NCBI RefSeq assembly: GCF_032191835.1
Contig: NC_083232.1
Span: forward strand, 62,496,001-62,560,000
Direction of reading: 5' to 3'
DNA length: 64,000 bases
From: Heteronotia binoei
Lineage: Eukaryota
A model generated the notes under the pieces. That model was given only the letters and a program-made list of their open reading frames with translations. It did no database searches and was not told where the DNA came from. Below, piece by piece: positions 11,086 through 49,134 of the stretch; the first letter of the stretch is position 1, and the number at the start of each line of letters is the position of its first letter. The translations under genes and the position numbers were made by a program.

Positions 11086-12391
11086 GGAAGTACTCTATGA
11101 ATTCACATATTTGGGGAATTTATTATTGTATTTAGGGAATGTGTAAACTATAAACTTTAAGTGTGAGTTGAGGTCAAAGAGACTGGAAGAAAGAAAAAGG
11201 GTGACTATAAGCAAATGTAAATAAATGTACTCAAGATTCATAGCCCTTGGGGATGAGAACTAAAGGTTTAAGCCAAAGGAAGAAACAAGTTCTGAGAAAG
11301 GAATATACGATTAACCAGAAGATGTTAGGATTAGGGGATTTTCTTGGACCCTGGGCACCAAAGTGAACAATGAATGAGGGCAAAATTAAGTCCATGCTTC
11401 TGTCTCCACCTCTGAGAAATGTGGTGCCACTGTAGTACTGCCACTGCCCAAGGGAAGTATAAAAGAGTTCAGGAGAAAGGTGGATTAGGAAGCCTTTTTT
11501 TTTTTTTTAGCAGCCCTTTCTGTTTAGGGTCTACCTGCTTTGAGGATGGTGTGTCTTAAGGCTTCTGAAAACCTCTCATCAACCTGCCCTCTCTTTCTCC
11601 AAATTCTCAGGAGACTGAGGGTTGAGAACCCCACAAACCTATAAGGATACTGTCTCTTCAACCTTCCTGGATCTTTGGATCGATAACAACACATCAATTT
11701 CTTGCTAGGAAACTGAGGTAAAATTAGAAAAGCAGGTTGACGTTTAATGGTTTAATGTTTAAATTTAGATCGGCTGACATACATTAAGCTTGCTCTCATG
11801 CTTGCAACCTTTTCTTTCATGTACATTTACAATGCCTAGTAGCTTATGGTTCATGGCTCCACTACCTAACATGTCCTCTACTGGGGACTGGTTTAGAACC
11901 ACACTACAGACCAGTGGCGTAGCTAGGGCTTTGGGGGCCCGGGGCCCAAGATTTATGTGGGCCCCCCTATGTGTGTGCACGCCACCAGAAACAGGATATG
12001 ATGTCACTTCCGGTGATGTCACTTCCGCAGGATGGCCACCACTTGCGAAGGGCCTCCAAACCGGGGGATCTCCTGCCCCCACCTGGGGATTGGCAACCCT
12101 ATTTGGAAGACCCCACTGAAGCCCCCCCCTTTCCCAAACCCTCCAAAATCTCCCGACCTGGGCCAGTGGGGCGAACTGAGCTAGCCGGCCACTAGTTGAC
12201 CCTGGGCACTGGCATGGCCACGCGAGGCCGGCTAAACGAGGGCATCGCTATGAACAAATAACGGGGGGGACAGCGGGATGCAGCCAGCCCCGCTGCCGCT
12301 TCACTGCACCCAACTCTCACGCCGCCCGGCTCGGCGGAGCCGCTGATCTTGCGATATGCCGCAATATTCTCGGCCCGACTGGCTGGCTGAC

Positions 12392-12466
12392 CTTGCCGGA
12401 GGTGCCGTCGCCCAAAACCACGAACTTGAGCTGCCGGTCGGAGCACTCCTCCTCAGAGTCCGACAT
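12392..12466 (-). pseudogene. RAB28: Captured copy of RAB28 coding exon 1 ([25 protein letters not shown]) with intact GT donor; not the resident RAB28 gene
   Basis: Closely matches the recalled human RAB28 N-terminus ([25 protein letters not shown]). It is 75 nt followed by AAG|GTCAGC, lies inside a TIR/TSD-bounded element, and no RAB28 exon 2 was seen in 1-11900. Confidence 0.85.
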
Positions 12467-12750
12467 CGCCCGGCGGCCAGAAGGAGTCCCGCGCTCATTC
12501 ACTCCTCCTCACGGCGGCAACGGAAACAAAGTCGCCGCCGCCATCTTGCTTCCCCTTCGACCGCTCGCTATGGCAGCCGCTGGACGAGACCATGAGGCAG
12601 AACGGGGGGGGGGGAGACAGAAAAGGAAGGTGCCCAAGCCGACTCGGGGAGGGGGGAGCTGTACTGAGCGGACCAGGAACGGGCGGTGTAGCCGGTGAAA
12701 GAGTGAAATAGCGCAGCGGAGAAAAAGCGGGAATGAGATTCGGCTCCTTC
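12467..12750 (-). promoter_or_regulatory. Captured RAB28 5' UTR and CpG-island core promoter
   Basis: CpG-dense; canonical YY1 site AAGATGGCGGC on the minus strand at 12537-12547; GC-box-like runs upstream. Confidence 0.65.
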
Positions 12751-13247
12751 GGGACCCCCCTTGGCAATGCGGGGGCCCCCCAGACCCCCCAGACCTGGGG
12801 CGACCCGCCCCCCCCGCCCCCTCCCTACGCCACTGCTACAGATTCATGTTTTATTTGTTTATGCTTCTGCACTTCTTGTTTATGTATCTCATAGTTTTCC
12901 TTTCAGCTCCAGAAGCTTTACAAAATGGTATGACTGAGAGATAACAAAAAAAAGAGGGTAATACACTGGAGGAAAATATACAATGGAACAAGGAAGAATG
13001 AAATTGGCAGCCTGTCACTAAAGTACTGTAACGGTCAATCTCCAAGACGTAATTCCTAATCAAAATGGTTCTCAATACTGGAAAAATTAGAAGATACCCT
13101 TGAAAAAAAGGGTATTCATAACGGGACCAATACTACAATTTTTTTTGAAAACCAGCTGGTTAATCTAATTATAGATATTTAATTTAAAAGTTATGTTTAA
13201 GCATGTAACAGATATGTTACCTTTATATAGACTAAGACTGTGTTAAC

Positions 13248-13426
13248 CAGGGCTTTTTTGTAGCAGGAATTCCTTTGTATATTATGCCATGCCCTCCTGA
13301 TGTGCCAATTTTCCTGGAGCTTACAGTAGGCCCTGTACTAAGAGGCATGTAAGCTCTTGGAGGATTGGCTACATCAGGGGTGTGTGGCCTAATATGCAAA
13401 GGAGTTCCTGTTACAAAAAAGCCCTG
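13248..13426. mobile_element. hAT MITE, CAGGGCTTTTTT-TIR family (179 bp)
   Basis: cagggctttttt / aaaaaagccctg; TSD gtgttaac/gtattaac (7/8). Confidence 0.9.
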
Positions 13427-14756
13427 GTATTAACTAAGAATAAAATTATGGTGCTGTAACATTCTATTGATGGTGAGTTGTTGTATTTGAAGTTTAAGAA
13501 AAATAAAAATGTTATACAAAAAAAGATAATCATATTTACCCCAAGTCATATCAATTAATAATAGTTTATCCTCCACAATTTTCACCCACATAGATTTAAA
13601 AGGCTGTTGTGAGTCAGCCAGGGCTCAGTAATAGTGAGGGCTCTTCAGGAGGAGCCCCATATACCCAAACTTGAGTTAACAGAAGCTGACCAGCAGGAAA
13701 ATGAACTACAGGCTTGTCAGGATTGCTTCTGAACAGCTGGCTGGAAGCATGACCCTTAGGCATGGGGCTATAAAAACCAGCCAAGAGAGGCTGTTAGGCA
13801 TGGACACAAGTTCATGCTAACAGTAATATTCTCCTCCAATACCACATTTTGAACAAATCAGCTTTCTTCATCCCCATACATAACAATGGGGGAAACTATG
13901 GCATGAATTATCTTGATCTTGGTTATTAGAGACACATCCTTATACTTAAGAACCATTTATAGCTCCTTCATGGGCAGGCTTCCCAGTCTCAATCTCCTGA
14001 TTTCTTGGTTGCAGTTTTCCTATTGGTTGATGACTGAGCCAAGGAATAAAAAATCTTGAACAATTTCAATTTCCTCATTGTCATCCTTAAAGCTGTATAG
14101 TCATGCCTTTTGTCTCCTTAACAGTCAGCTGTAATCCTGCTTTGACACTTTCTGCTTTAATGCTCAGCAGTAGTCATTTTATATCTTCATTATGTTCTGC
14201 CAGAATGTTACATATCTCAAATTCTTAATGTTCCTTCCACTGATTTTCACTGTACCTTTTTAAAAAACTAAACCAGCTTTCCTTATGATTTGTTCTTCAT
14301 ACAGATCTGAATAGATAAGGAGAATAGATAAAATACATCCTTATCTGTCACCTTTGCCAGATGAAAACCATTCTGTTTCTCTATATTCTGTCCTAACAGG
14401 AACACCTTGTCCAGAGCTCAGGTTGCACATCAAAACAATCAGATTTATGACACACCTATTTCATCACAGGATTTTTGAGGTAAGAGAGTATTAAGAGTCA
14501 TTTACCATGCCTTTTCCTGTGCATCTAACTAGACTTAGCTGAAGTGGCACCACTGTTGTCTATAGAAGATCCTCTACCACAGTCACTTTCTACTACTGGT
14601 GTTGCCCAGCAACAACCTTTTAAGTATTCCTCCACTCCCATCACCAGTGGAACTGTCCATTCTCTTCTGCTGATGTGGCTGTTAATGCATCTTAGTCTGG
14701 TGTCTCAGCAGTGACCATTTTGCCTTCAGAGACTCTGCTATGAGTTTAGCCTCTGG

Positions 14757-14879
14757 CAGAGCTTTTTTCTTTTTGTAGAAAAAGTCCAGCAGGAACTCAT
14801 TTGCATATTAGGCCACACCTCCTGGCCCCAAGCCAGCCCAAACTGCATTCCTGTGTGCTCCTGCTCAAAAAAATCCTTG
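14757..14879. mobile_element. hAT MITE, CAGGGCTTTTTT-TIR family
   Basis: cagagctttttt...aaaaaaatccttg; internal sequence matches 27603 and 48043; TSD degraded. Confidence 0.8.
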
Positions 14880-15849
14880 ATCTCTTGACAGAGTCCCAAC
14901 TCCATACAGTTTGGTTCTCAGCTTTCCTGACACACACAAAGCACCTCCCCATTAAGGTGTGCATCAAAGAGGGGACACAGTTGTTGGATTTTTGTCAAAA
15001 AAATTATCTTATCTGTACATGGCCCCATTGGGCAGATATTTTGATCCACAATATGAGACAAAATTCAGTATTACATATATTTTTTGTAAGACACATTCTA
15101 TAAGCATTTCCTTTCCTTTTTTTCTTTTTGCACCTTCCAGAGTAAAGGTTGCAATTTCAGACCAAGAAGAAGCAGCAGTAGTTCATGCCAAAATGAGAGG
15201 AATACAAACATAGTAGAAATTACTAGAAATGATCCAAATGGGTTACTAAAGCAGTTAATATACCAGAACTTCAAATAGAGTTATTTTTAATATATCAGGA
15301 AAAGTGTCAGTATTATAATGGTCTTAACATTCTGCTGAGGATGTCTTTTGGCATGTATTTTATTTCAGCTATTTCTAAATTATTTGAAATTATTTATGGA
15401 GGATGAGAAATGTCATGCTCCTGAAAACTTAGATTCTATTCTATGTCTACAGAATGTGGAGAGTGTATTATTAGTTTTTCAAATACTTACAAACCTTGCA
15501 AAGGCTTTTCAGTATCTTTTTATAAGTTATAGCCAGGCTTGGAGCTAAGCAGCTTCCGTGTGACTAGCAAACTGCAGCAGAATACTGTGATAATAATATC
15601 TTTAAATAAGTCTATATACTTACATTTAAAGTATCTACCTACATTTAAAGTAGATCAACAAAACGGACAATCTAGATCTTTAAGAATTCAAACAAGCAGC
15701 TAGTCAGATGGGGCAGAAGGTGGCATTTAACTCCCACCACAGAACAAACAGGGACACTACATCGTTACAGGCAGGAGACATGAGTTCACAGCAAAGGCAG
15801 CAGACTTTGACAATCAGCTCCATGTGGATATACTGGAGCTGGTCAATCA

Positions 15850-16020
15850 GGAGAAGAAGGAAGAGGAAGAAGAATGCAGATTAATACTCTGCCCTTCTCT
15901 CTGAATCAGAGACTCAGAGCGGCTTACAATCTCCTATATCTTCTCCTCCCACAACAGACATCTTGTGAGGTGGGTGCGGCTGAGAGGGTTCTCACAGCAG
16001 CTGCCCTTTCAAGGACAACC
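15850..16020 (-). mobile_element. 3' half of Squam3-like SINE
   Basis: Reverse complement of the 49677 copy, including the (GAA)n tail and cagctgccctttcaaggacaacc. Confidence 0.8.
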
Positions 16021-16651
16021 TGATCATGCATGGAATGTGCTGTCTGTGCAGTTTCTGGAGAGTCAGCAGCTGTGTACCTGTATGATGTGGTCTCCAACTG
16101 CCCCTTTCAACCATCACTGTGCACCTCCCCATCTCCTCTGTTCTGCTATCCCCTTTTTTCACCTGTCACTCTTAACCTTGTCACATCTACACAAATGCTA
16201 ACTGTGTTTACTGATAACAATCTGTTTCAATAATCTGTTTCAAACTTGGCTTCATGTATTGATTAAAGTTATTAGTGTTCACTATGGATAGGGTCGAAGC
16301 AGATAGACAATGAACTGTGGTTAAGGCTAACAAGAGAAGAGGCAGCAGGACTTAGGCTGGTTGGAGGCATTGTGCATTCTGCACAATAGATTATAATTCA
16401 CAAAATATTTTTTCCAATGATTAAGGCTGTTGCTGATAACATGTATTCTGTAATCCACACCTGCTGGATGTTTAACAGAAGACGGTTCAGCATTTCAAAC
16501 CCTGGAATTTAACTTCAGTACTTTAGCTCCATGGTAAGAAACCAAAGATGAAAATGAAGATATTCAGTTCTGTTAGAGATGAATTTTAAAAATCGCATCA
16601 GAAACCCTAAAAATTTAAAATTCTGATTACTACAGATTTGTCAGGCTATAC

Positions 16652-16975
16652 CAGAGGTGGCCAAACTGAGGCTCAGGAGCCATATGTGGCTCTTTTATAC
16701 ATATTATGTGGCTCTCAAAGCCCCCATCACTCTGTTGGCTGGCTTGGAGAAGGCATTTTCTCTCTTTAAATCACTTCACGAAGCCAGCTTGCTTGTTCTC
16801 TTTCCACCTCTCCCATCTATTTTCCTTCCTCCCTCCCTCCCTCCCTTCCTTCCTCCCTCCCTTCCGTTCTGCCTGCCTGCCTGCCGGCTCTCAAATAAGT
16901 CCATATCTTGCAGCTCTCAAACATCTAACATTTATTCTATGTGGTTTTTATGTTAAGTAAATTTGGCCACCCATG
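16652..16975. mobile_element. hAT MITE, CAGGGGTGGCCAAACT-type TIR
   Basis: cagaggtggccaaact / aatttggccacccatg; TSD ggctatac/ggctgtac (7/8); homologous to 33550-33826. Confidence 0.88.
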
Positions 16976-18849
16976 GGCTGTACTGTTTCCCACATCCTAT
17001 CAACTATTCAATAATTATTAAACCCACTGCATTCCAGCAATAATTTTTTGCCATCTACCTAATTACTGAATTCCAAATTCCTAGTGAATGCCAATCCAAA
17101 ATACAATTGCACATTGACTGTGAAATGCTAAAAACCTATACACCACCTGCTATTCCATAATATTTCTGAAAGGCTAATTACTAATGCATATGATTTACCA
17201 TACACACTGAAATACTAAACACTGTTGCTTTTTCACCTCTCATTCTGCCAAATATTGCCAAGTATGAAAATGAAAGATCAAATTTAAACCCAAACATGGG
17301 CTGTCAAATAATTACATTGTAGCATCAGCTCTTGCATGAGATAACTGCTGGGGGGGGAGGGGGGCAGTAGCTTTAACCATCTGCAGAGCATTACTGAGGC
17401 AGATAGATAATTTACAATGCAATCTTAAGCAGATATATACCCTTTTATGACCATTGACTTCATAAGATTTAGAAAGGTGTAATTCTTTTTTGGACCGCTC
17501 TGAGAGGCATTTAACTATATGTATGAATAATTTATGTAAACTTTTTCTCTTTACTTAAGAACCAACACAGTCTTTCCCCCCATTCCATACAAATGATTTT
17601 TTAATCAGCACATGAGAAGAGGTAGGGGGGGCATCAATATTATTATTTAATTTTTGGCGTTCAAAGTTCTGTGCCCCCACTGCTTTATATCTACTAAGAG
17701 ACTTGTTTGGAAGTTAACATAAAGAAATGCCATTGCTTCCCATGAGCTTTCAAGGCCTGGCTTTCAGACGTCCTCTCCTGCCTGTCACAACAATCGTCTG
17801 AATTAATATTTTAAAAAGTGTTAGATATCTGTTTCAGAAAACATCCATACTTGTTCTAAGGGACATCCATAAACACACAGAAGCAAGCTTTGCAAGTAGC
17901 TTAGCTACCAGTGATGCTGATGAGATCAGACAGAAACAGCAATCAGGCATTTTTTTAAAAGTCAAGTGACTGCTCCTGCCATTTATCCCATATCTAAATC
18001 TATAAAACATAAGCCCTGTATAACACTGTACACACAGTGGTAAAAGTTCTTTCTGACTTCAATAGACTTAGAAGTGTGTAACTCTTATGTAGCGCTGTAC
18101 TTACAAGGCCTTTCTTTTGAACAGATAAGTGTATGAATCTTTTTTGTGCAACAGTGTTCTAGCTCCCACACTGGAGATGCAACCTAAATACACCATCCAC
18201 AATGTATCATATTTCATCCATGCAGATGTTCCAAAGTGTATAATCTCTTCCCATGAAAATTCTGCACATCATATGAGGACAATCTACAGTTGGAAGATCT
18301 GCAGTTCTATACTATATATTATGTGTTCTCCAAATGTTAATGGAATTTCATTTTAGGCGGGGTTTTAAGTGGAGTGGGCCCTTAGAGATAAGTGATGGGT
18401 GGTGTACCATGTGAGGAAATGCTTGTTGAATTTATATACACTATCATGTTTCTCTTGATTTTTTTTGTCTTTTTTTTTCTCTTCTACCCCCTTGGGGGTA
18501 AGAACAATTCCAGGCACCTTCTGGAATGATTGCTATATTGTTAATGTTTTTAATTATTTTAAACTGTATTTAAATGTTGTACACTAGCCTCAACCCCAAG
18601 TATTGGGGGAGGGTGGTCTAAAAATTAAATATAAAAAGAACAACAACAATACTGTTTCTCCATTTAGAAATGTCCACATTTAGGAAGAGCATTTTACAAC
18701 TGGAGGTGCTTAAGTGCTAAGAACACAACACCATAAATTTCAACATGTGGCAGATAATTTACTGAGTCTATATAAGGATTGAAAGATTTATATTAGGATC
18801 TTTTCTCCATGCAAATGACCCTGAAGGTTTCCTTTACTGTCAGGTTAAT

Positions 18850-19063
18850 CAGTGGGTATTAGCCATGGTGACTGAGAGGAACCCACATGTTCAGAGGCAG
18901 TCAGCCTCTGAATGCAGTGCTGGGAGGCAAGATCACGAGAAGGTCTTGGCCTCTATGCCCTGCTGTTGGTCTTTCAGAGGAACTGGTTGGTCACGATCTG
19001 AGACAGGATGCTGGACTAGATGGACCACTAGTCTGATCCAGCTGGGCTCTTCTTATATTCTTA
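18850..19063 (+). mobile_element. CR1-type LINE 3' end fragment
   Basis: gatgctggactagatggaccact...ggctcttcttatattctta, related to the CR1 3' ends at ~26400 and ~57420. Confidence 0.7.
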
Positions 19064-21075: not shown

Positions 21076-21459
21076 TAGGGTTGCCAGTCCCTAGGTGGGG
21101 GTGAGGGTTCTCCTGATTTCATGTGCTCTTGCCTGCCACTGGCCAGCTAGCCAATGGGGGGGAACCCCACCCCCAAGAGCAACCACTGGTGGCCACCCCT
21201 CTCCCTCCCTCCTGTGAAATTTAAATAGCCCTTCAGCTGACTGGCAGGAACATGTGGCCTGCTGATTTAAAGGAGAGCTGTTTACATTTTGCAAGAGGAA
21301 GGGATAGGGGATGCATGCCTAAATTTCAGATGTGAAATGGCTGCTTGGAGTTCAGGCGTGTGGGGTGCTGGTCCCTAACATGATGACAGCACTTCTGCCC
21401 CCTCCGGGAATGGCACCCAAAGTCCCCCACCAGGGAGGAATCAGAACCTGGCAATCCTA
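21076..21459. mobile_element. hAT MITE, TAGGGTTGCCA-type TIR (older copy)
   Basis: tagggttgccag / ctggcaatccta; TSD largely degraded. Confidence 0.7.
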
Positions 21460-23409: not shown

Positions 23410-26400
23410 AATACCATATGTAAAATTGGTGAGTTGGAATGTTTAGTGTTGGGGGAAAACATAGACATTGTGGGAATTTCAGAAACTTGGTGGAATGAGG
23501 AGAATCAGTGGAACACGGTGATTCCTGGATATAAGTTATACCGGAAGGATAGGGAGGGAAGGGTTGGAGGTGGTGTGGCTCTGTATGTCAGAGAGGATAT
23601 ACGGTCCAGTAAGACTGAGATCAGAGAATTGGACTCCCTTATAGAAATGCTTTGGGTTGAAATAGAGGGCCCAAAAGGAAATTTAACTATGGGAGTTTGT
23701 TATCACCCATCAAATCAAAAGACAGAGGATGACTATAATATGATGGAAGGCTTAAAGATGGTGGCTAGACGAAAAAACAGTGTCATCATAGGTGATTTTA
23801 ACTACCCGCAGATTGATTGGGTCAATATGTGTTCTGGTTGAGAGAAAGAGATTGAGTTTCTAGATGCTCTCAATGACTGTGCTATGGAGCAGATGGTCAC
23901 AGAACCTACCAGGGGTGGGGCGATCCTGGATTTGGTCCTAAGTAATGCCCAAGACCTGGTGAGAGATGTAAAAGTGATCGCACCGCTTGGGAGCAGTGAC
24001 CATAACATTATTGATGTCACTATTTGTATAAATAGGGAGTTGCCCCAAAAGACCAGCACGACCACGTTTAACTTTAAAAGGGGTAAATTCACTGAGATGC
24101 AGAGGCATGTGAAGAGGAAACTGAAAGGAAAGGTAAATACAGTCAAAACCCTTGAGGAAGCTTGGAGGCTATTTAAAACTACAGTCCTAGAAACACAGAT
24201 AAAATATATACCACAAGTTAGGAAAGGTACAAACAGGTATAAGAGAAGGCCTGTATGGTTAACAAAGTAATGGAAGCTGTAAAAGGTAAGAAGGACTCCT
24301 TTAAGCGGTAGAAAGCTAGTCCAAGTGAAATTAACAAAAGGGAACACAGGCAATGGCAAATCAAATGTAAGACTGTGATCAGGCAGGCAAAAAGGGACTC
24401 CGTCTTTTTGCCTCCGTCTTCACTGTGGAAGATGAGAAGTGTTTACCTGCTCTGGAACCACTTCTATTGGAAGGGGTGTTGAAAGACCTGAGCCAGACTG
24501 AGGTGACAAGAAAGGAGGTCCTACAACTGATGGACGAATCAAAAAGGGACTATAAGGAGCATATTGCAAAAAACATAAAGACCAACAATAAAAATTTCTT
24601 CAAATATATTAGAAGCAGAAAACCAGCCAGGGAGGCAGTGGGGCCCTTGGATGACCAAGGGGTCAAAGGATTACTGAAGGAGGATAGGGAAATGGCTGAG
24701 AAGCTAAATGAATTTTTTGCCTCCGTCTTCACTGTGGAAGATGAGAAGTGTTTACCTGCTCTGGAACCACTTCTATTGGAAGGGGTGTTGAAAGACCTGA
24801 GCCAGATTGAGGTGACAAGAGAGGAGGTCCTACAACTGATAGATGAATTAAAAACCAATAAGTCACCAGGTCCAGATGGCATACATCCAAGAGTTCTAAA
24901 AGAACTCAAAGTTGAACTTGTGGATCTTCTAACAAAAATATGTAATCTTTCATTGACATCTGCCTCCGTTCCTGAGGATTGGAAGGTAGCAAATGTCACC
25001 CCCATCTTTAAAAAGGGTTCCAGAGGAGATCCAGGAAATTACAGGCCAGTCAGTCTGACTTCAATATTGGGAAAGTTGGTAGAAACCATTATCAAGGACA
25101 GAATGAATAGGCACATTGATGAACACGAGTTATTGAGGAAGACTCAGCATGGGTTCTGTAAGGGAAGCTCTTGCCTCACTAACCTGTTACATTTCTTTGA
25201 GGGGGTGAACAAACATGTGGACAAAGGAGACCCGATAGATATTGTTTACCTTGACTTCCAGAAAGCTTTTGATAAAGTTCCTCATCAAAGGCTCCTTAGG
25301 AAGCTCGAGAGTCATGGAGTAAAAGGACAGGTCCTCTTGTGGATCAAAAACTGGCTAATTAATAGGAAGCAGAGAGTGAGTATAAATGGGCAGTCTTCAC
25401 AGTGGAGGACGGTAAGCAGTGGGGTGCCGCAGGGCTCAGTACTGGGTCCCATGCTCTTTAACTTGTTCATAAATGATTTGGAGTTGAGAGTAAGCAGTGA
25501 AGTGGCCAAGTTTGCAGATGACACTAAATTGTTCAGGGTGGTAAGAACCAGAGAGGATTGTGAGGCACTCCAAAGGAATCTGTTGAGGCTGGGTGAGTGG
25601 GCGTCAACGTGGCAGATGAGGTTCATTGTGGCCAAGTGCAAAGTAATGCACATTGGGGCCAAGGATCCCAGCTACAAATACAAGTTGATGGGGTGTGAAC
25701 TGGCAGAGACGACCAAGAGAGAGATCTTGGGGTTGTGGTAGATAACTCACTGAAAATGTCAAGACAGTGTGCGATTGCAATAAAAAAGGCCAACACCATG
25801 CTGGGTATTATTAGGAAGGGAACTAAAAACGAATCAGCCAGTATCATAACGCCCCTGTATAAATCGATGGTGCGGTCTCATTTGGAATACTGTGTACAAT
25901 TCTGGTCACCGCACCTCAAAAATGATATTATAGCATTGGAAAAAGTGCAGAAAAGGGCAACTAGAATGATTACAGGCTTGGAACACTTTCCCTATGAAGA
26001 AAGGTTAAAACGCTTGAGGCTCTTTAGCTTGGAGAAACGTCGACTGCGGGTGACATGATAGAGGTTTACAAGATCATGCATGGGATGGAGAAGGTAGAGA
26101 AAGAAGTACTTTTCTCCCTTTCTCACAATACAAGAACTCGTGGACATTCAATGAAATTGCTGAGCAGTCGGGTTAGAACGGATAAAAGGAGGTACTTCTT
26201 CACCCAAAGGGTGATTAACATGTGGAATTCACTGCCACAGGAGGTGGTGGCAGCTACAGGCATAGCCAGCTTCAAGAGGGGGTTAGATAAAAATATAGAG
26301 CAGAGGTCCATCAGTGGCTATTAGCCACAGTGTGTTGTGTGTGTGTGTGTATATATATTATTGGCCACTCTGTGATACAGAGTGTTGGACTGGATGGGCC

Positions 26401-26439
26401 GTTGGCCTGATCCAACATGGCTTCTCTTGTGTTCTTATG
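23410..26439 (+). mobile_element. CR1 LINE, 5'-truncated ORF2 (APE endonuclease and RT) plus 3' UTR; inactivated
   Basis: ORFs 23398..23841 (DIVGISETWW, IIGDFNYP), 23884..24270, 24425..25741 (GPDGIHPRVLKE, GVPQGSVLGP, KFADDTKL), 25735..26058 and 26055..26324; stops and frameshifts; 3' end atggcttctcttgtgttcttatg. Confidence 0.95.
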
Positions 26440-39590: not shown

Positions 39591-40478
39591 TATAACAGCA
39601 CGCCTCGCGGTCTCACTGGATCGCTTCTATATCCGGCTTATGGCTACCCCAGCCCCTCTTCAGCCTCAGTTCTTCCTTTAAAATTTTACCTCACGACTAT
39701 AGAACTCGAGGGGTGGGTGTACTATGGATTTCTCACTACTAGTCTCTTCGGGGTTGTTGTTTTGCTTTCAGATGGATATAAACTCAGTTTGTAGGGGACC
39801 ACATTAGCTTTGATAGTTTTCCCAATATACTGGCACCAGAGAACTTTAAAGTAAACCACAGAAATTTATTAACATACACACACCGTCTTCAACTGGGGAA
39901 TGGGAAATATATACATGGGCTATATTGTATCTCAAGCAGTTAACAGTTTCTTCATAGTTCAGGCTTTATAACATCTAGTTCACTTAGGTCTCTCAGGTTT
40001 CACAGATCATACAGCTTTCACTCTCCAACACTATTCTGGGTTGGCCTCTTGGGTATAATGCGCCAAGTCCCTTAAGTCGACTGGAGTCTCTTCTCCCAGA
40101 CCTTCAGACTTCTAGACCCACATATTTCCCTCAACCACCTCTTTAGCTCTTAAGAGAAGTGTCTTTGTGTCTGTGACCTCTCAGGTCTTTTACTGTGACT
40201 CTTGTCTAGTCACACACAGCCCCTTGGCTGTCTTTATAGAGTGAACAGTGAGCTTTGCTTCTCTCGAAGACTCTCCTCACCTCCTGTCTCAGCTCCTTCT
40301 CAGACCAACTGCTCTCTTCAGCAGTCTCCCTCAGACTCTGTCTGACACTAACTGCCCTCAGTCGTTAGCTGTCAATCACCTCTGAGAGTTCCGAGCACTC
40401 TGGCCCCCACCCTCAGGTCACCTGACGCAGGCTCTATGCATCCTTAGTTTTCTGGTTAACCCGTTCATTACCGTCACA
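39591..40478 (-). mobile_element. Solo LTR (888 bp)
   Basis: Minus strand starts TGTGAC and ends GTTATA (one change from ...ACA); 4-bp TSD acct (39587-39590, 40479-40482); AATAAA on the minus strand near 39865. Confidence 0.72.
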
Positions 40479-41907
40479 ACCTGCTCAGCTTTCACTAGAT
40501 AGTTTGACAGTTATGGAGATGCACAGTTATTAAGGGACAGTTAGTCTTTATAACTAAGCCTAACTTTCTAAACATGGCCAGTTTCACAGTCCAGTTGGAC
40601 AAGCTGTCCCAAATATTCAGAGTATGGTTTAGCTAAAAAATTATGGCAACTCACAAGTGGAGCACATCTATCTCACAGATGACTTGCTGTGCAAAGCAAA
40701 GAGGGAAAGATAAATATCCTCCAACCATTTCATACATTTATATGATGCCACCACTCTCCCTTAAAAGGGATAGTCAGAAAATAACTCTGTCTATTCTGTA
40801 TACCAGTTCTCAGTTCTATAAAATTACAGTCATGACATAAAACACCTCATTTTACACACACTCTCTTTTCCAAGTAATATTAAAACTCATTGGCAATGAT
40901 TTTCTATTACCACATACACCTATAAAAATGAAGTGCTGATTTACAGTAAATTGAAAACATGACACTGCTTTTTGTCACAGACATACCCTCCTAGAACCAG
41001 ACTATCCTGGCAGTGTCATCACTGTTCTGCTTTGAAGGACAATATAGGTTGCTGGGAGCAGGGGAATAACATCATGCTCTCAGTCAACCCAGAAAATAAA
41101 CATTTAAACTAGAACCTGTTTTTTACCAGATGCATTCCTTGCCACCAACAACGGTTGCAACTGTACATTTTCTGCTTTTCTTTCACCCGCTCCCCCCTCA
41201 ACAGAACATTTACAGTCAAGAGCACAGAAATCCACACAAACACACAAATGGAAGCTATTGGCTCAATGCTACGTCCTATTACAATTTTTTTTTAAATAAT
41301 AAAGATCTTGGATCTTTAAAATGCTTAGGAAATAAGATCAATGTAGCACTTCTAAGCTACTTTTTTCTGTGGTCATTTTTTTTTTTACAGCTATCTCAGT
41401 GTTTTGGTTGACAATAAAAATATCTTGCCTTGTGTAATTTTGTACCAAGACAGTTAGATGGCTACTTTTGGGATAGTAGTTTCATTTGCAAAACTCTTGT
41501 TACAGTTCTACAGGGCCTGTAAAACAGAGCTGTTCACCAGGCAGCAGATATCCAACAGGTGACATATTGGAGTCCCCTGAGCAATGTATATTTTGCTGCC
41601 ATCTTGTTTTAGTAGCTGGTTTTAATTACATATTTATTGTATTTTATTTATGTTGTTATCTCACCATGAGATAGGGTGAGATATAAGTATAATAATAAAT
41701 AAATGCTGTAAGCCATTTGATTCATTGAAATTGATTCATTCAAAGATAACTTTTCTATCACATTCTCTCTGTCATTGCATAGACTAACAAAGTTGTAAAC
41801 ATAGCTATGATAAGTATTAATGTCCTTTCCTGCCAGTAAGCCTTCCAGTATAGTAAGAATTAAATGAACCATTGCTCAGTTACTCATTATTGCTCACAGA
41901 TCCCAGT

Positions 41908-42563
41908 TAGGGTTGCCAAGTCCAATTCAAGAAATATCTGGGGACTTTGGGGGTGGAGCCAGGAGACATTGGGGGCGGAGCCAGGAACAAGGGTGTGACA
42001 AGCATAATTGTTTTTACATTTAAAGGGACAGCACGCCTTTTTAAATGTCTTCCTTCCTTAGGAAATAATGAAGGATAGGGGCACCATCTTTTGGGGCTCA
42101 TAGAATTGGACTCCCTGGTCCAATCGTTTTGAAACTTGGGGGGTACTTTGGGGAGAGGCACCAGATACTATACTGAAAATTTGGTGCATCTCTCTCAAAA
42201 AACAGCTCCCCCAGAGCCCCTGAAACCTCCAGATCAATTCCCCATTATACCCTATGAGAATCGATCTCCACATAGGAAATAATGAAGTGCTCAGCAGATG
42301 TTTCCCTCCCCCCGCCACCATTTCTGGCGACTGAAGTGAGAGATTGGCCTCTCTACTCTTGAGTTGCTGCCAGCTTCTTCAAAGTAACACAGACACACCA
42401 TCCCAAAATGAAGCCTTTCAGTCAGAGACTGAAGCCTCCGGAGCTGGAAAGGCACATGGTCCTCTGGGGCGGGGCTTCCCCCCGCCAGCCAGCTGACTGG
42501 AGGTGGGAAGGAGCCTGGGAAAGCGGAAGAACCCCCGCTGGGGCCTGGGGAGTGGCAGACCTA
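41908..42563. mobile_element. Non-autonomous hAT element, TAGGGTTGCCAA TIR (656 bp), nested in a Penelope-like insertion
   Basis: Perfect TSD atcccagt (41900-41907, 42564-42571); colinear with 8075-8714. Confidence 0.92.
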
Positions 42564-42612
42564 ATCCCAGTAGGCAGCTGTGTTGGTCTGAAGCAATAGA
42601 ACAAAACACTAG

Positions 42613-42771
42613 ACTGAGCAATGATGAACAAAGCAGTAGACAAGTGCACCTTTAAGACCAACTAAGTTCAGAATGTAAGCTTTTGTATGCATACGAAAGC
42701 TGACATTCTGAATAAAACTTAGTTGGTCTTACAGGTGTGCTTGTCTACTGCTTTGTTCATCATTGCTCAGT
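42613..42771. repeat. 159-bp near-perfect palindrome made from a Penelope-like terminal motif
   Basis: Arms actgagcaatgatgaacaaagcagtagacaag...gtatgcatac centre; about 5 mismatches and one 4-nt indel. Confidence 0.9.
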
Positions 42772-43693
42772 TACTCATCAGTATCTCAGCATTAAAAGAC
42801 CAGATAGTTCCTTGTTCATCATATGCAAGTATGAGATGAGTGCAGGAAAGAATCTCTAAGAAGATAGTCTTTTCAGCTCACTCTTTCATAGCTACAGCAA
42901 ACATGATAGGAAAGTTATCACTCAGTTATCACCTGATGTCACTCAGAATGGGGTTACAAGCTTGCTGCATTATCAAACATGTTGTTCCTTTCATCTTTAT
43001 AGGAGGCTCTGAAAAGTTCCCTAAATCCTCCCCTTGTTTTACCTTCCTCTACATTTTAAAATCTGTTAAGTGCTTCGCATAGCAACCTTTCTTAAGCTGT
43101 CTAATAAGTTGCAGATACGACATTGCACTGGGTGATTTATCAAGATAATGGTTTCAATAGAATTTAGTAGTTCTATTGTCTTTTATTCTCTCTGTGCTTA
43201 TATATATATATAAAATGTTCTTTGTCATAGATATTTCGCTAATGATGGTGGCCAAATTGAACTCTCCCACTGGCTTACGGGTGCATACCATGCACTCCAT
43301 ATACCAATGGCTCATCACAGCTCAGTCTCTGGCTTCCCACTGGCTGACTTCCCTGCCCCCACCTACTGCAGGCCTAGGAATACTGAATAAATCACTAAAA
43401 CAGTCTTACCTCAGAGGCAGACACATCTCCAACTCTTCTCTCTGTCAACTGGCCTCACAAAAGGCATCACTGGCAACAGTCCTCTGCCACCCTATCAACA
43501 TCCCACACAGATGGCCTCTCAGCACACACAGTCTCTGAAGGCTGCAGAAATATCCAGGGAACTGCTGCTGTAATGTGACAAGGTGGCAAAGTCTGGCCCC
43601 GCTGGGAGTGTTTCCTCAGAACTAATGGCTGTGCCTTTTTCCTGTCACTCCCTCTCTCCCTCCTCCCCCCAGCCTCGCCCCTAGTCAGAGGCT

Positions 43694-43706
43694 GTTGCTA
43701 GGCAAC
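43694..43706. promoter_or_regulatory. RFX X-box-like palindromic motif GTTGCTAGGCAAC
   Basis: Matches the RFX inverted half-site consensus; function untested. Confidence 0.35.
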
Positions 43707-44408
43707 CAAGGTTGCTTCTTTCAGTAAAGGAAGAGGCCATAGGTGAATAGAATGGCATACAGTCTATCCTCCAGAGCAGTTCTTTTCTCCAGGATGAGTA
43801 AAAGAGGTCTGTTGTCTGGAGTTCAATTTTGATTCCAGGAAATCTTCAGGCTCTACATGGAAATTGGCTACTCTAGGCCTGGAAGCACCCTCCGGGTGAC
43901 TTGATGCCACCTGGCAGGCATGACTTAACTAGGCCTAGATGCTTGCTCTTGTTCAGCAGCAGCCCCACTATGACAGGCAACTCCAAGTTGGGAAACTCTG
44001 GGAGATTTGAGGGGTGGAGTCTGGAGAGTGTGGGGTTTGAAGAGGAGAGGAACCTCAGACAGGTACAATGCCATAGACACCACCCTCCAAACCAGCCATT
44101 TCCTCCTGGGGAACCACTGTTGCCAATCTCCAGGTGAGGGCTGGAGATCACTCAGAATTACAACTGCTCTCCAGATGACAGACATCAGCTCACCTGGATG
44201 TGGGGGGACCATCTCCATACGGTACAATGGAGAATTTCACTTGCCAAGTTGTGCTGCCATAAAAACATGACTCGGCAAGTGAATTGGGCATTGGTAGCCA
44301 AATCAGATTGTCCAAACTGTATTTGGCTAAGAAATTCCAGGAAATTACTGATAAGATATTTTGGGGGATATTTCTTCACCTTGATATAGACCAAGGCACA
44401 CTCTAGAC

Positions 44409-45804
44409 CCATGATGGCGAACCTATGACACGCGTGTCACTGGTGACACGCGAGGCAATTTGGCTGACACACTGGAAACCAAGGAGCGTGGCGAGCCGCG
44501 AGTCATTCGGAGGCTGCTGAGCTCGTCTCGGAGGAGCAGCAGCTGCTAAGGTGAAGGCGAGAAGAGGCGGCAGCAGCACAGCGGGCCGCCGCCGCCTCTT
44601 TCCCCGGCTCCAGGCCGGGGGTGGGGGTGGGAGGGAAGGTTGGCCGACGCTGCCAGCGCCTCGCCTTGACCTGGGGGTGGGAGGAGACAGCCTCCTGGCG
44701 CAACCGGTCCCCCACCCAAAGCAGAGGCAGCCAAACGCGCCTCCTCCTCCTCGCAACAGGGCCGAGCTTTGCAACCCCCTTTTCCCGCCCTCCCCGGGGC
44801 CTGAGGAAATAGGTGGGTATAGCAAGAAAGAAAAAAAGAGCATTGCAAAAAAAGAGGCAGGGGGGGAAAGAAATGCCCTCCTCGGCGGGTCGTGCCTTTG
44901 CAATGCCGGGGCTTTGCAAATGCAGGAGCAAGGCAGGCGTGTTTTTTTCCGTTTGTTTGCACGGAGCGGCTGGGGGAGGGGGAGGCAGAGATGGCATTGC
45001 AGCAGTGTGTGGGGGGTGCAATGCCCGAGGGGACGTCGCTCTTGGGCCTGTTGTGGGGCTGCCCCCCTCCTCCTCCACCCAGTCCTGTTTTTTTTTTTTT
45101 TTGCAACCAACATGATCTTTCTCACTTTGCTCTCTCGCTCTTTCTCATGGCCGCCTGCCAGAGGCGGGGTTTCAGATTTAAAGGACAAGCTGCCCTTTTC
45201 AGCTTGGAAGAGGAGGAAGGGGGTGGGCGATGGGGGCTGTGTGTGGGTTGCAAAAGAGCAAGGGGAGGGGAGCATTGGGTCGCCCCCCTTGGCTTCCCTT
45301 GGCAAGCGCTGGAGGAGAAAAGGTGGGAAGAAAAAAAGATACACCCTTTCCCGCAGGGTTACCAATCCCCAGGTGGGGGCAGGGGATCCCCCTCTCCCCA
45401 AAATACCCCCCCAAGTTTCAAACGATTGGACCAGGGGGCCCAATTCTATGAGCCCCAAAAGAAGGTGCCCCTATCCTTCATTATTTCCTATGGAAGAAAG
45501 GCATTTTAAAAGGTGTGCTGTCCCTTTAAATGTGATGGCCAGAACTCCCTTGGAGTTCAATTATGCTTGTCACACCCTTGTTCCTAGCTCCACCTCAATG
45601 TCTCCTGGCTCCACCCCCAAAGTCTCCTGGCTCCGCCCCCAAAGCCCCCAGATATTTCTTGAATTGGACTTGGCAACCCTCTTTCTTTATTGGGGCTGCA
45701 AATATCATCAAATTATTGATATGGTGAAGTGACACGCGACCCGAAGAAGACTAGACTTTTTCCCGATTTTCGACACACCAAGCTGAAAAGGTTAGCCATC
45801 ACTG
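44409..45804. mobile_element. Non-autonomous hAT (Charlie/hAT1-like) element, 1.4 kb, with CpG-rich interior
   Basis: TIRs ccatgatggcgaacct vs reverse-complement cagtgatggctaacct (13/16); perfect TSD ctctagac (44401-44408, 45805-45812); subterminal tgacacgcg repeats. Confidence 0.9.
45354..45681. mobile_element. Internally deleted TAGGGTTGCCAA-family hAT element nested inside 44409-45804
   Basis: cagggttaccaa / ttggcaaccct; body is the reverse complement of 8075-8330; TSD only partial. Confidence 0.85.
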
Positions 45805-48042
45805 CTCTAGACATTACATATGGGCAGTGGGTGAGAAGGATGTTGCCAGGAAGGGCCAATAAAAGCAAAGACTGGATTAAAGCAATTGTTTGTTTGTTTT
45901 AAAAAATGAACATATTCTAGACTACAATGAATTCATCTATTATTTTACTAGATAAACTCTCACTGAACCCATGAACTTAAAACAACACTTCTATGGGGGT
46001 TACACAGCAATGTTCTGTTTTCAGCTTAAGTGACTGAGTTGTTAACATTTCTTTCTACATATGACTTGAGGGTATGCATGCACCATACAATTAAATACCT
46101 AGTACCTACAAATGTTCTGCTAACCAGATTGCTAATTAGCGTGCTGTTTTTATATGATGCTTCATAAAGTTCTACTTAATGCAACCCGATGACAGGATCA
46201 TTAAAAGATACCTCAGTCACTGCAGTGAGGGGAAGCTCATGTGGCTTGCCCTGAACCCACAGTGATTTTCCCAGACCTACTTTCACTCCTTACGATACTG
46301 ATGAATCAGCAAGATGGAATGCAATAAAAATATCCTTTAAAGCAGATCTTCATGCCCAAATGCTTGTACCTCTATTAGCCTTATTTACAGAACATCTATG
46401 AAGTACTCAGCTCTAATTATCACAGCAAAGGATGCTTTAAACAAAACAACAACAAAAATCTTTTTCCTACTATGTGTTTATTTGCAATACTGTGATATTA
46501 TCCTCTTTGCCCTCCAACTGTGCAAGTTTCAAAACAGAGAGAAAATGATGAAAAAGAATATCCCTCTTCTGGACCATTTGACATGAAAAAGGGTATTAGT
46601 TTGCTTTTAAATCACAATTCAGTCTAGAAAGTCAGCCAAAGAAAATTCTGAGAAGGCCCACACAGTATGTGTAACTAGGACACCTCACATATTTTGACAA
46701 GGGGGATATTGGACTGAAGATTATCATATTGTGGCTGTTGAAGAAATAATGTTCAATAAATAAAAATTTAATCAGAGGGTTTGTTGCTAGTTAATCAGGA
46801 TGGACATTAAAATACTGTTTCTAGCAGGACTTATATTGGAACAAAATAAAAGTATGAGAAAGTCTCGGGGTGGGGGGGAGACCAAAATCTAATGTGAATG
46901 CTGTTTCGGGGGAGGGGGAGAAGGAAGATAGAGTACTCTATAACCTACCAAAAGTAGGGAAGAGAGAACGAAGTGGGTAGGAATGAAGATTATACGCTAT
47001 TATGGGCACACACGGATTTAATAAAGACAATTCTATTATACCAGAAATAACAAACAATTTAGATAAACAGGAATCATTTTTGCACAGACTACTTGCATGA
47101 TGAGATCCAGTACAGGCAGGTAACTGAGGCTATGCTAATTTCAGAGAAAGCATTTATGCATTATTTTAAAAATTATCTTTTTACTACATTTGAACCTCAC
47201 CTTTTTCCAATGAGCTCAGAGCAGCTTACTCCATCTCCCTCTTTCCATTTCATCCTAATCACCCCTGGGCTTATATTTTCATTGGATCAAATGACTGATT
47301 TCCCACCAGTTGCTGTGTGTGCTCATTTTGACCCATGGCTTTCTTCAGTTCTCCCTGTGCCTCCAAACTTGTTTTTTTTTAAACATTGGGAAGGTGCAGA
47401 GAGAACTGGAGGGAAGCACAGGTCAAAATGCGCTTGCGCAGCAACTGGTGGGGAATTGATCACATGTTCTGACAAAAGTAGAAGCCCAGGGGTAGAGCAA
47501 AAGTGACTGCAAAATCAGTATCTGCAAATGATATAGGTAATGAATCGGGAAGGAGAAAACACAGAAAACTACATACTGACCAGTGGTCCCCATTAGGGCC
47601 TAAAAAAAAAAAGGTGTCAGAACTCTCAAGATGAAAATGAAGGAGAAACACATGCACTTTTAAACCATTTTGAGAATTTTGTTTCCATGAAGAGGTTCTG
47701 GAACTCTGTTTCACTGTTCTCACAGGGGAAAAAAGCCCTGGCCCCCACACCTGAGAATGGTAAGAAAACTCTTCTGCTTAGAGCAGAAGTATATCGCCAC
47801 TGAAATGACATTCCCCTTCCAAGTTCTCCCTTTCTGTTTGTAATATACAGGAATAATATGTCATGAAACCACGACTTTGCATGTCCACATGTCTGCCAGT
47901 AGCGGCTGTTGCTAAGGAGTGAGATATATTTTTTAGGCATTACAATCAGCATACCAGGAGTAGGGGTGTGTATTCAGGTAAACATAAGCCCAAATTATAC
48001 CTGAAATTAGCTGTTTTAGGTCAGCTGTGGGATACCTGAAAC

Positions 48043-48230
48043 CAGGGCTTTTTTTGTAGAAAAGCCCAGCAGGAACTCATTTGCATATTAGGGCATACCC
48101 TGTGACATCACCATTGTTTAGCACAAGGCTTTTTTGTGGGAAAAGCCCAGCAGGGGCTCTTTTGCATATTAGGCCACACTCCCTGCTGCCAAGCCAGCCA
48201 GAACTGCATTCCTGTTCAAAAAAAGTCCTG
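48043..48230. mobile_element. hAT MITE, CAGGGCTTTTTT-TIR family (188 bp)
   Basis: Perfect TSD cctgaaac (48035-48042, 48231-48238). Confidence 0.92.
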
Positions 48231-48577
48231 CCTGAAACAATCTTGAAACACTCCAGAAATGGTAGAAGTAATGACAATTCATGAAATTTCAGAAAAAACA
48301 TAGAAGTGGAGAGGAAAGAGAGGAAACAATCCCAGAAAGAACATGGCAGTCAGTGTCTCTCTTCCCTTTAAAAGAGATGCTTACAAATAGCTGATGGTCT
48401 GTATACCTATATGGCTCCTTTAAATTTTGAAGGGAAAAGGGTTTAAAATGGCCCTGAACTTTCCGCTGGAGGCTTCTCCCTACTGCTGGCATTGGAGACA
48501 GACAAGCCTGCCCCCAGAGCCAGAAAATGGTGGGCAGGCTGGCAGGCTACTTGACTCTCACCAGCTATGGCTATAGT

Positions 48578-49134
48578 CAGGGGCGTAGCTAGGGCTTCGG
48601 GGGCCTGGGGCGCAAGATTTATGTGGGCCCCCCTATGTGTGTGGCGGAGGGGAGGGGCTTCCCTGCCTTAAGACGCTGAGCGGCGCGCGGCCCTCCCCAC
48701 ATCCCTTCGCCCCCGCAGCCTGCCTCACGCACGCCCGAAGTTCCTCTTTCTGGCGCACCGCCGCGGCCAGGAGCGGCTGAGTCGTCGGCGCCTGGGAGTT
48801 GAGGGGGCCGGAGAGCTCCGGGGTGCTGCTGCCGAGCGTGGGGATGCGGCCACTGGGTGTGCAATGCCACCGCCTCCTCCTCCTCCTGCTGCCCGCCGCC
48901 GCCTGCTGCTTCCTGCTGCTGCCCGCGGCACGTGGAGCAGCAGGAGAAGCCTCGAGCAGGCGAGGGTCGGACGCCGCTTCCCCCGCCCCGAGCTGGGACT
49001 GTGGCCGGAAGGTCTGCGCGATGCTCCGGAGCCCTGCCGGGGAGGGGAGGGACCCCCCTTGGCAATGCGTGGGCCCCCCAGATCCCCCAGACCTGGGGCG
49101 ATCCGCCCCCCCGCCCCCCCTCCCTACGCCACTG
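48578..49134. mobile_element. Pack-hAT element 2 (557 bp) with GC-rich first-exon-like cargo
   Basis: Same termini as 11912-12835 (left 62/66 identical; right ~85 bp highly similar); perfect TSD gctatagt (48570-48577, 49135-49142). Confidence 0.92.
48844..49011 (+). pseudogene. Putative captured first exon encoding a signal-peptide-like N-terminus (MRPLGVQCHRLLLLLLPAAACCFLLLPAARGAAGE...WDCGRK); donor gene unidentified
   Basis: gggATGc start; basic n-region, Leu-rich h-region and small-residue c-region; possible donor AAG|GTCTGC; CpG-rich upstream. Donor gene not recognised. Confidence 0.45.

What the first reader, a model, noticed from the sequence alone, without database searches (positions are those of the whole stretch)
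11912..49134. Pack-hAT family: identical hAT termini carrying unrelated CpG-island/first-exon cargo
Seen: 11912-12835 and 48578-49134 share a 66-bp left end (62/66) and an ~85-bp right end, have CAGTGGCGTAG-type TIRs, and each has its own 8-bp TSD (ctacagac/ctacagat; gctatagt perfect). Each therefore moved as a unit. Their interiors (11978-12750, 773 bp; 48644-49048, 405 bp) show no similarity I can see, and both look like gene 5' ends. Known: 8-bp TSDs and CAG..CTG ends mark hAT elements; gene-fragment capture is well known for plant Pack-MULE/CACTA elements and is much less documented in vertebrates. Inference: a non-autonomous hAT family in this lizard repeatedly captures GC-rich promoter/first-exon DNA. 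Two differently loaded copies in 37 kb suggest many more genome-wide.
Basis: partly seen in the sequence, partly recalled or inferred. Interest (0 to 1): 0.92.

Follow-up and report, generated by a model that had tools for sequence, protein, structure and literature searches.

The report
Gene-capturing hAT transposon family in lizard
Two cut-and-paste (hAT-type) transposons in this window belong to one young family with over 1000 ends; one carries a copied RAB28 promoter and first exon, and relatives carry other CpG-island-like DNA, a kind of gene-fragment capture already known in animals but unusually frequent here.

Summary
Both elements share a 66-bp left end and an 85-bp right end, have CAGKGGCGTAG inverted termini and their own 8-bp target-site duplications, and have unrelated interiors.

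Copy 1 (11912-12835) is a true Pack-type hAT. Its interior is the promoter, exon 1 and start of intron 1 of RAB28. The real four-exon-plus gene lies on contig C9 without any termini. A second copy with a different duplication lies on C21.

Copy 2 (48578-49134) is an ordinary member of a roughly 565-bp subfamily with about 86 copies. Its interior is fixed and multi-copy. It looks like a signal-peptide first exon, but exhaustive pattern searches found no terminus-less donor.

- There are over 1000 candidate ends and at least 18 interior types among 60 sampled ends.
- Four further types each match a single interior-only locus; three of them are themselves multi-copy.
- In 11 types, the 500 bp next to the right end is mutually unrelated but always CpG-island-like.

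The kind is known: Pack-TIRs in animals (Tan 2021) and foreign DNA in Anolis hATs (Novick 2010). What is new is the scale, the copy numbers and the fixed right breakpoint. The scan had already noted other Pack-hATs elsewhere in this genome. No autonomous partner was found.

The parts
11904..11911 (.). Left target-site duplication of copy 1 (CTACAGAC)
   Evidence: Read directly. It matches 12836-12843 at 7 of 8 positions.
11912..12051 (+). Left end of copy 1. The inverted terminus is 11912-11928. About 140 bp of family backbone is shared with the longer family members.
   Evidence: The first 66 bp are 100% identical to at least 40 genomic copies. Positions 1-140 are 93-98% identical to 28 of 30 sampled long members; the other two match only positions 1-72. 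The junction with the cargo is shown.
12047..12752 (-). Cargo of copy 1: the RAB28 promoter region, 5'UTR, exon 1 and the start of intron 1. The gene lies on the minus strand.
   Evidence: It matches C9:5387130-5387797 without termini. Substitution divergence from that locus is 3.7%. C9 carries RAB28 exons 1-4 in order.
12392..12466 (-). RAB28 exon 1 coding part. It has 25 codons ([25 protein letters not shown]) and is followed by a GT splice donor.
   Evidence: The query P0025 is RAB28 by PDB 2hxs, E 5.5e-65.
12751..12835 (+). Right end of copy 1. It is 85 bp, 80% G+C, and has a G-quadruplex motif on the bottom strand.
   Evidence: (955 candidate copies).
12836..12843 (.). Right target-site duplication of copy 1 (CTACAGAT)
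48570..48577 (.). Left target-site duplication of copy 2 (GCTATAGT)
48578..48643 (+). Left end of copy 2
48644..49048 (+). Interior of copy 2. It is the fixed interior of a roughly 565-bp subfamily and is CpG-island-like.
   Evidence: All 40 scored genomic matches are full length at 93-100% (39 others at 93-97% plus the window's own copy), out of 130 candidates. Exhaustive pattern counts are 86, 86 and 57. Copies differ from the consensus by 1.1-2.9%.
48844..49011 (+). First-exon-like open frame in copy 2. It has 56 codons with a signal-peptide-like stretch and ends AAG|GT.
   Evidence: The frame is kept in the subfamily consensus. The source gene is not identified.
49049..49134 (+). Right end of copy 2
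49135..49142 (.). Right target-site duplication of copy 2 (GCTATAGT)

Best explanation
Both elements belong to one young, abundant, non-autonomous hAT-type family. The family has 8-bp duplications, tips of the YARNG type (CAGKG...) and no transposase of its own.

Family members keep 66-173 bp of the left end and about 85-110 bp of a very GC-rich right end. Everything between has been replaced many times by foreign DNA. The part next to the right end is always CpG-island-like.

Copy 1 is such a Pack-type element. About 700 bp of the RAB28 5' region were copied from the gene on C9 into an element, and the product then transposed to at least two sites (C10 and C21).

Copy 2 belongs to a subfamily whose interior was fixed before a burst that produced about 86 copies. 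That interior looks like a 5'UTR plus a signal-peptide first exon, but its source is not identified.

Shown: the structure, the copy numbers, the RAB28 donor, four further interior-only loci, and the CpG-island-like character of the cargo.

Inferred: capture happens by template switching during repair of the gap left by excision, or at a stalled replication fork. It is guided by short microhomology. The fixed right breakpoint and the GC bias may both come from the G-quadruplex-prone, C/G-run-rich right subterminal region.
For: Family and mobility:
- There are 1018 and 955 candidate ends in the genome.
- Of 27 elements with 8-bp duplications, 23 are perfect.
- The longest open frames have no Pfam transposase domain.

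Copy 1:
- The interior matches only three places: itself, a twin on C21, and C9 without termini. The twin has termini, its own duplication CCTTGAAC and unrelated flanks.
- C9 holds RAB28 exons 1-4 in order, whereas C10 and C21 hold exon 1 only.
- Divergence is 2.0% between the two copies and 3.7-4.1% to the donor.
- Junction microhomology is 2 bp on the left and up to 5 bp (TTCGG) on the right.

Other types:
- The 1004-bp type has 8 copies plus C7 interior-only. That cargo holds an upstream region and the first 15 codons of a signal-peptide frame, with 16 bp of filler at the left junction.
- The 918-bp type has 7 copies plus C15 interior-only.
- The 1559-bp type has 3 copies plus C3 interior-only.
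- The 788-bp type matches a C10 locus without termini.

Bias:
- In 11 types, the 500 bp beside the right end share no similarity.
- All have GC 0.53-0.76 and CpG observed/expected 0.65-0.87. The window medians are 0.42 and 0.15.
- The right breakpoint falls within about 25 bp in all 30 sampled right ends, while the left breakpoint varies from 65 to 173 bp.
- The right end has a G4 motif.

Copy 2.
Against: - No autonomous element with matching termini was found. The abundant hAT open frames of about 940 aa show no such termini in the 5.4 kb read around one copy and 1.8 kb of a second.
- No donor was found for the copy 2 interior. Part of it also occurs in composites with an unrelated hairpin-ended repeat.
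- Only 60 of more than 1000 ends were sampled.
- For the C15 and C3 loci, 'terminus-less' rests on query coverage alone.
- Only RAB28 is named with confidence.
- No related species could be compared, so no empty sites were seen.
- The capture mechanism and the role of the G4 motif are inferences.
Confidence: 0.8

Rival explanations
1. The interiors are leftovers of an autonomous hAT element, that is, ordinary internal-deletion derivatives and not captured host DNA.
For: This is the usual origin of non-autonomous elements. The copy 2 interior is multi-copy and has no donor.
Against: The copy 1 interior is RAB28 DNA with a mapped donor gene. Four other types match single terminus-less loci. Eleven right-adjacent interiors are mutually unrelated. 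No transposase domain occurs in any long open frame.
Confidence: 0.07
2. The copy 2 interior is not a gene 5' end. It is GC-rich filler, for example pieces of other repeats or non-genic CpG-rich DNA, that only resembles a first exon by chance.
For: Three exhaustive pattern searches tolerating about 10% divergence found no terminus-less homologue. Candidate loci turned out to be elements or composites. GC-rich DNA yields long open frames by chance. There is no Pfam match.
Against: An ATG opens a 56-codon frame with a hydrophobic leucine run that ends at AAG|GT, and the frame is kept in the consensus. Sister types with proven donors carry the same kind of segment in the same position.
Confidence: 0.35
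3. Capture occurs by composite transposition. Two nearby family copies flank host DNA, the outer tips are used, and the inner tips then decay. On this view there is no template switching during repair.
For: The 1559-bp type keeps a partial internal right end about 150 bp behind its left end. hAT elements are known to form macrotransposons (established knowledge of Ac/Ds).
Against: The RAB28 and C7 junctions show microhomology or filler and no remnant of inner tips. No family ends lie within 8 kb of the RAB28 donor or in the roughly 1-1.5 kb read at the C7 and C10 donor loci. The near-constant right breakpoint is not expected from random decay of inner tips.
Confidence: 0.2
4. The loaded elements arrived by horizontal transfer with cargo picked up in another species.
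For: hAT families in lizards are often horizontally transferred (PMC3014272). BLAST identity to the donors looked low, at 82-90%.
Against: With indels set aside, the RAB28 cargo differs from the host's own non-coding promoter and intron by only 3.7%. This fits capture within this lineage.
Confidence: 0.03

Closest known systems
Pack-TIR / Pack-hAT elements of animals (Tan et al. 2021, PMC8277862), for example Pack-hAT-N8_XT carrying the CAPSL 5'UTR in Xenopus tropicalis
   Same: These are non-autonomous elements bounded by inverted termini whose interior is a copy of host DNA with an identifiable parental locus. Breakpoints show microhomology. The multicopy cases have distinct target duplications and tend to hold GC-rich DNA.
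   Different: That survey found 370 cases in 100 genomes, and only four were multicopy with about 3 copies each. Here one family in one genome has at least four multicopy loaded types (2, 3, 7 and 8 copies). It also has a first-exon-like subfamily of about 86 copies, a near-constant right breakpoint, and CpG-island-like cargo in every type sampled.
Pack-MULEs of rice and other plants (established knowledge; cited in PMC8277862 and PMC8903248)
   Same: A single transposon lineage repeatedly acquires gene fragments, prefers GC-rich 5' parts of genes, and amplifies them.
   Different: The superfamily differs (Mutator, with 9-11 bp duplications and long inverted termini) and so does the host kingdom. 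Here the element is a vertebrate hAT with 11-17 bp termini.
Non-autonomous hAT families of Anolis carolinensis, especially hobo-N1 to N15 (Novick et al. 2010, PMC3014272)
   Same: These are lizard hAT families with conserved ends and very different central regions. The differences come from incorporation of extraneous genomic DNA and from recombination between elements. The families are young.
   Different: The foreign DNA described there is mostly fragments of other repeats in 1.3-3.4 kb elements. The tips are TAGGCTT..., and none of the tips in the part of that table that was read is CAGKGGCGTAG. Capture of promoters and first exons is not reported.
Helitron gene capture in bats and maize (own knowledge, not tested here)
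   Same: Promoters and first exons are dispersed by a DNA transposon in a vertebrate.
   Different: Helitrons use a rolling-circle mechanism and have no inverted termini and no 8-bp duplication.

Membership tests
hAT superfamily | 8-bp target-site duplication | tested here: met
   All 27 elements have one: 23 are perfect and 4 have one mismatch.
hAT superfamily | Short inverted termini beginning with YARNG | tested here: met
   The tips read CAGTG or CAGGG. The inverted repeat CAGKGGCGTAG(S)NAGGG spans 11-17 bp. The motif definition comes from PMC3014272.
hAT superfamily | Target preference nTnnnnAn | tested here: inconclusive
   T is at position 2 in 9 of 27 and A at position 7 in 10 of 27. 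The trend is weak.
hAT superfamily | An autonomous relative encoding a transposase with the hAT dimerisation domain and the same termini | tested here: inconclusive
   The genome has 2623 candidate PF05699 matches and many open frames of about 940 aa. The two copies examined show no CAGKGGCGTAG tips in the flanks that were read.
Pack-type (Pack-TIR) element | Interior derived from non-transposon host DNA with an identifiable parental copy | tested here: met
   Met for copy 1: RAB28 on C9, with exons 1-4 in order. Also met for the 1004-, 918-, 1559- and 788-bp types. Not met for copy 2, for which no donor was found.
Pack-type (Pack-TIR) element | No transposase; depends on termini only | tested here: met
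   The longest open frames of copy 1, copy 2 and the 3-kb type have no Pfam family above cut-off.
Pack-type (Pack-TIR) element | Transposition after capture (several copies with different duplications and flanks) | tested here: met
   Copy 1 and its twin have different duplications and unrelated flanks. The other types have 8, 7 and 3 copies on different contigs.
MITE (for copy 2) | Short (under about 600 bp), non-coding, high copy number, homogeneous, with inverted termini and target duplication | tested here: met
   Length is 553-591 bp. There are about 86 copies by exhaustive pattern count, at 1.1-2.9% from the consensus.

The most novel reading that the evidence does not exclude
This vertebrate hAT family may have a built-in capture hot spot. 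Its G-quadruplex-prone, 80% G+C right subterminal region could stall synthesis and switch template to GC-rich DNA. The family would then systematically pick up CpG-island promoters and first exons and scatter them, in one case to about 86 sites. It would act as a promoter and first-exon shuffling engine comparable to rice Pack-MULEs.
Probability: 0.35. Interest if true: 0.75.

Novelty: new member of a known kind. Interest (0 to 1): 0.55.

Why it matters
Gene-fragment capture by cut-and-paste transposons is a major source of new exons and promoters in plants. In animals it has looked sporadic and almost always single-copy. Here a single young lizard family repeatedly loads CpG-island DNA, keeps moving afterwards, and has one fixed breakpoint. 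That gives a concrete vertebrate system in which to ask how capture happens and why it prefers gene 5' ends. It also raises the question of whether dispersed promoters with splice donors, such as the RAB28 piece here, create new transcripts.

Tried and rejected
1. Donor for the copy 2 interior.
- Three exhaustive pattern searches, each allowing up to 3 mismatches, gave 86, 86 and 57 hits. A junction pattern gave 139 hits.
- Fifteen interior hits had no listed junction, and one further locus carried only the 5' part of the interior. Eight of these loci were fetched. Three are full elements. The others are composites or truncations joined to a hairpin-ended repeat, including one diverged copy that lacks its left tip.
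- A search with the composite found only more composites and one locus matching its unrelated upstream part.

2. Autonomous partner.
- The first 1.4 kb of 30 left-end loci contain no transposase frame.
- PF05699 finds many open frames of about 940 aa. The flanks of two of them lack the family tips. Their true ends were not reached.

Only one 3-kb member was completed.

4. Public reads.
- Only three runs hold small parts of the stretch.
- Their contigs show the family's left end, a very high-copy 55-bp repeat, and the real RAB28 exon 1 allele.
- Nothing in them is specific to copy 1, and no empty site was seen.

5. No paralogous empty sites for either insertion exist in the sequence held.

6. 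PDB search with the 25-aa exon alone was weak (E 0.12). It became decisive only through P0025.

7. Horizontal origin of the cargo was rejected on divergence.
Full report
OBSERVATION

Copy 1 spans 11912-12835 (924 bp) and is flanked by CTACAGAC and CTACAGAT. Copy 2 spans 48578-49134 (557 bp) and is flanked by GCTATAGT on both sides. The two share the first 66 bp (94%) and the last 85 bp or so (93-94%). The interiors align no better than any two GC-rich sequences. The tip pattern occurs only at the four tips in the window, against 0.28 expected.

THE FAMILY

The window's genome (2.63 Gb) has 1018 candidate matches to the left end and 955 to the right end. The 40 best left ends are 100% identical over 66 bp.

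In the 3-kb loci fetched, 25 complete elements (the window's copy 1 among them) all carry 8-bp duplications, 22 of them perfect. A 3030-bp member completed by a further fetch has a perfect GGACCTAT duplication.

Tips of the form CAGKG fit the YARNG motif that defines hAT ends (PMC3014272). The longest open frames of copy 1, copy 2 and the 3-kb member hit no Pfam family above cut-off.

These are therefore non-autonomous hAT-type elements. Their activity is recent: the copy 2 subfamily lies 1.1-2.9% from its consensus.

COPY 2

The whole 557 bp is 93-95% identical to about 20 of the 30 right-end loci. Its 405-bp interior has 130 candidates, and all 40 that were scored are full length at 93-100%; 39 are other copies at 93-97% and one is the window's own. 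Exhaustive pattern searches count 86 copies.

Copy 2 is thus a routine member of a MITE-like subfamily and not a uniquely loaded element.

The interior has GC about 0.74 and CpG observed/expected about 0.8. It holds an ATG-started frame of 56 codons with a leucine-rich, signal-peptide-like stretch that ends at AAG|GT (48844-49011). The frame is kept in the consensus.

I looked for a terminus-less source:
- Fifteen interior hits had no listed junction with the right end, and one further locus carried only the 5' part of the interior. Eight of these loci were fetched.
- Three are complete elements.
- The rest are composites in which part of the element is fused to an unrelated repeat ending in a long hairpin, or truncated or diverged copies.
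- No homologue within about 10% divergence lacks termini.

The origin of this interior stays open.

COPY 1

The interior (element positions 136-841) matches three places only:
- itself;
- C21:29300933-29301623, which sits inside an element with both termini, its own duplication CCTTGAAC and unrelated flanks;
- C9:5387130-5387797, where the match stops exactly at the cargo borders and no family end lies within 8 kb.

On the minus strand the cargo reads [25 protein letters not shown] followed by GT. A library search with the C9 open frame returned P0025. P0025 is RAB28 by the solved structure 2hxs (E 5.5e-65).

Searching the genome with P0025 places exons 1, 2, 3 and 4 in order on the minus strand of C9. 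They lie at 5387424-5387507, 5368915-5369058, 5361698-5361796 and 5356658-5356834. The C10 and C21 places hold exon 1 only.

The cargo includes the upstream region and intron sequence, so it was copied as DNA and not from mRNA.

With indels set aside, the two copies differ by 2.0% and each differs from the donor by 3.7-4.1%. There are 19 fixed differences between the donor and the element lineage. This means capture happened in this lineage, followed by at least one later transposition.

At the left junction the backbone and the donor share 2 bp. At the right junction the donor ends in TTCGG, which also precedes the right end in other family members, so up to 5 bp are shared.

OTHER TYPES

Clustering the 60 sampled ends gives at least 18 interior groups. 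Whole-element searches show the same pattern as for RAB28:

| Type | Copies | Interior-only locus |
|---|---|---|
| 1004 bp | 8 full-length, 94-100% | C7:2558525-2559299, matching interior positions 101-916 |
| 918 bp | 7 full-length | C15:66611726-66612270 |
| 1559 bp | 3 | C3:175530574-175531629 |
| 788 bp | 1 | C10 locus without termini |

For the 1004-bp type, the cargo ends 15 codons into a signal-peptide-like frame that runs on in the C7 locus. Sixteen bases of filler sit at the left junction, and substitution divergence is 8.1%.

The 3-kb type has at least 29 copies of its right part and no clear donor.

BIAS

In 11 types the 500 bp next to the right end share no similarity, apart from 21-25 bp at the border in three of them. 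All are CpG-island-like, with GC 0.53-0.76 and CpG observed/expected 0.65-0.87. The window medians are 0.42 and 0.15. Only 5 of 159 bins of 400 bp in the window reach such values, and four of those lie inside the two elements.

The right breakpoint lies within about 25 bp in all 30 right-end loci. The left breakpoint varies between 65 and 173 bp. The right end is 80% G+C and holds a canonical G-quadruplex motif on the bottom strand.

MECHANISM (INFERRED)

The most likely route is template switching during repair synthesis after excision, or at a stalled fork. Microhomology, filler DNA and copying of promoter plus intron DNA all point this way. This is the model proposed for animal Pack-TIRs (PMC8277862).

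The constant right breakpoint and the GC-rich cargo could both follow from the structure-prone right subterminal region. This is a hypothesis.

A composite, two-element route is hinted at by an internal partial right end in the 1559-bp type. It does not fit the RAB28 junctions.

WHAT IS NOT SHOWN

- No autonomous partner was found. The genome has many intact hAT frames of about 940 aa, but the two copies examined lack these tips in the flanks read.
- Public runs hold only small parts of the stretch. One RNA contig covers RAB28 exon 1 and carries the donor allele at 12442, so it reflects the real gene and not copy 1.
- No related genome could be compared.

COMPARISON WITH WHAT IS KNOWN

Tan et al. 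2021 found 370 Pack-TIRs in 100 animal genomes, 208 of them linked to hAT. Only four were multicopy, and those tended to hold GC-rich DNA. Novick et al. 2010 described lizard hAT families with conserved ends and foreign central DNA, mostly repeat fragments.

The present family belongs to that known kind. It stands out in several ways:
- the number of independent loads;
- continued movement after loading (2, 3, 7 and 8 copies, and about 86 if copy 2's interior is host-derived);
- uniformly CpG-island-like cargo;
- a fixed right breakpoint.

Other first-stage notes in this genome list further candidate Pack-hATs (LONRF1, CEP164, SLC22A31-like, a carbonic anhydrase-like gene, PTGES3L-like, and TERT with RAB26). 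I did not test these.

VERDICT

This is a new member of a known kind, of moderate to good interest.

Noticed in passing
window 12047-12105 (also C9 donor): A 55-bp piece of a very high-copy repeat lies inside the RAB28 cargo and in the donor locus. It has 731 candidates in the genome and very high depth in public contigs. It shares the GGTTGCCAA core, in opposite orientation, with the repeats at 8076-8141 and 41909-41974.
   Followed up: partly
L078, L079, L080, L085 (C2:45.19 Mb, C6:87.14 Mb, C21:101.18 Mb, C9:84.75 Mb): A repeat ends in a long nested hairpin (ACTCGAGTATAAGCCGAGG ... CTCGGCTTATACTCGAGT). It forms multi-copy composites with pieces of the copy 2 subfamily. Six copies at 96-100% carry interior positions 252-484 without either terminus. 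The kind of repeat was not determined.
   Followed up: partly
genome-wide, for example C10:48526048, C1:35329283, C8:81710164: At least 25 loci have uninterrupted hAT transposase frames of 937-944 aa. The family looks active, and its 3' region contains 123-bp tandem repeats. Its ends were not reached.
   Followed up: partly
window 44400-45000: This is the fifth CpG-island-like stretch in the window. It starts just after a palindromic motif, CCATGATGGCGAACCTATGACACGCGTGTCAC. It may be cargo of another transposon or a real island. No matching inverted end was found within 3 kb.
   Followed up: partly
L001:931-1338 minus strand (3-kb family member, C6:101.92 Mb): An open frame gives a sub-threshold Pfam match to M-phase phosphoprotein 6 (PF10175, E 1.2e-4, 22.9 bits against a cut-off of 29.4). 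It may be another captured gene fragment.
   Followed up: no
L010 and L011 (C5:981890 and C5:911097): Two 3-kb family members have identical left flanks 70 kb apart. This points to a segmental duplication and not to two insertions.
   Followed up: no
window 23856-26439 and 57418-63777: A series of inverted matches at 90-96% covers about 2.5 kb. These are probably two copies of a long repeat in opposite orientation.
   Followed up: no
window 12392-12549: A 188-nt contig from an RNA library covers RAB28 exon 1 and its 5'UTR. Its match stops exactly at the splice donor (12392), with 30 further letters that lie elsewhere. It carries the C9 allele (12442 G). This is consistent with spliced mRNA of the real gene.
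   Followed up: partly
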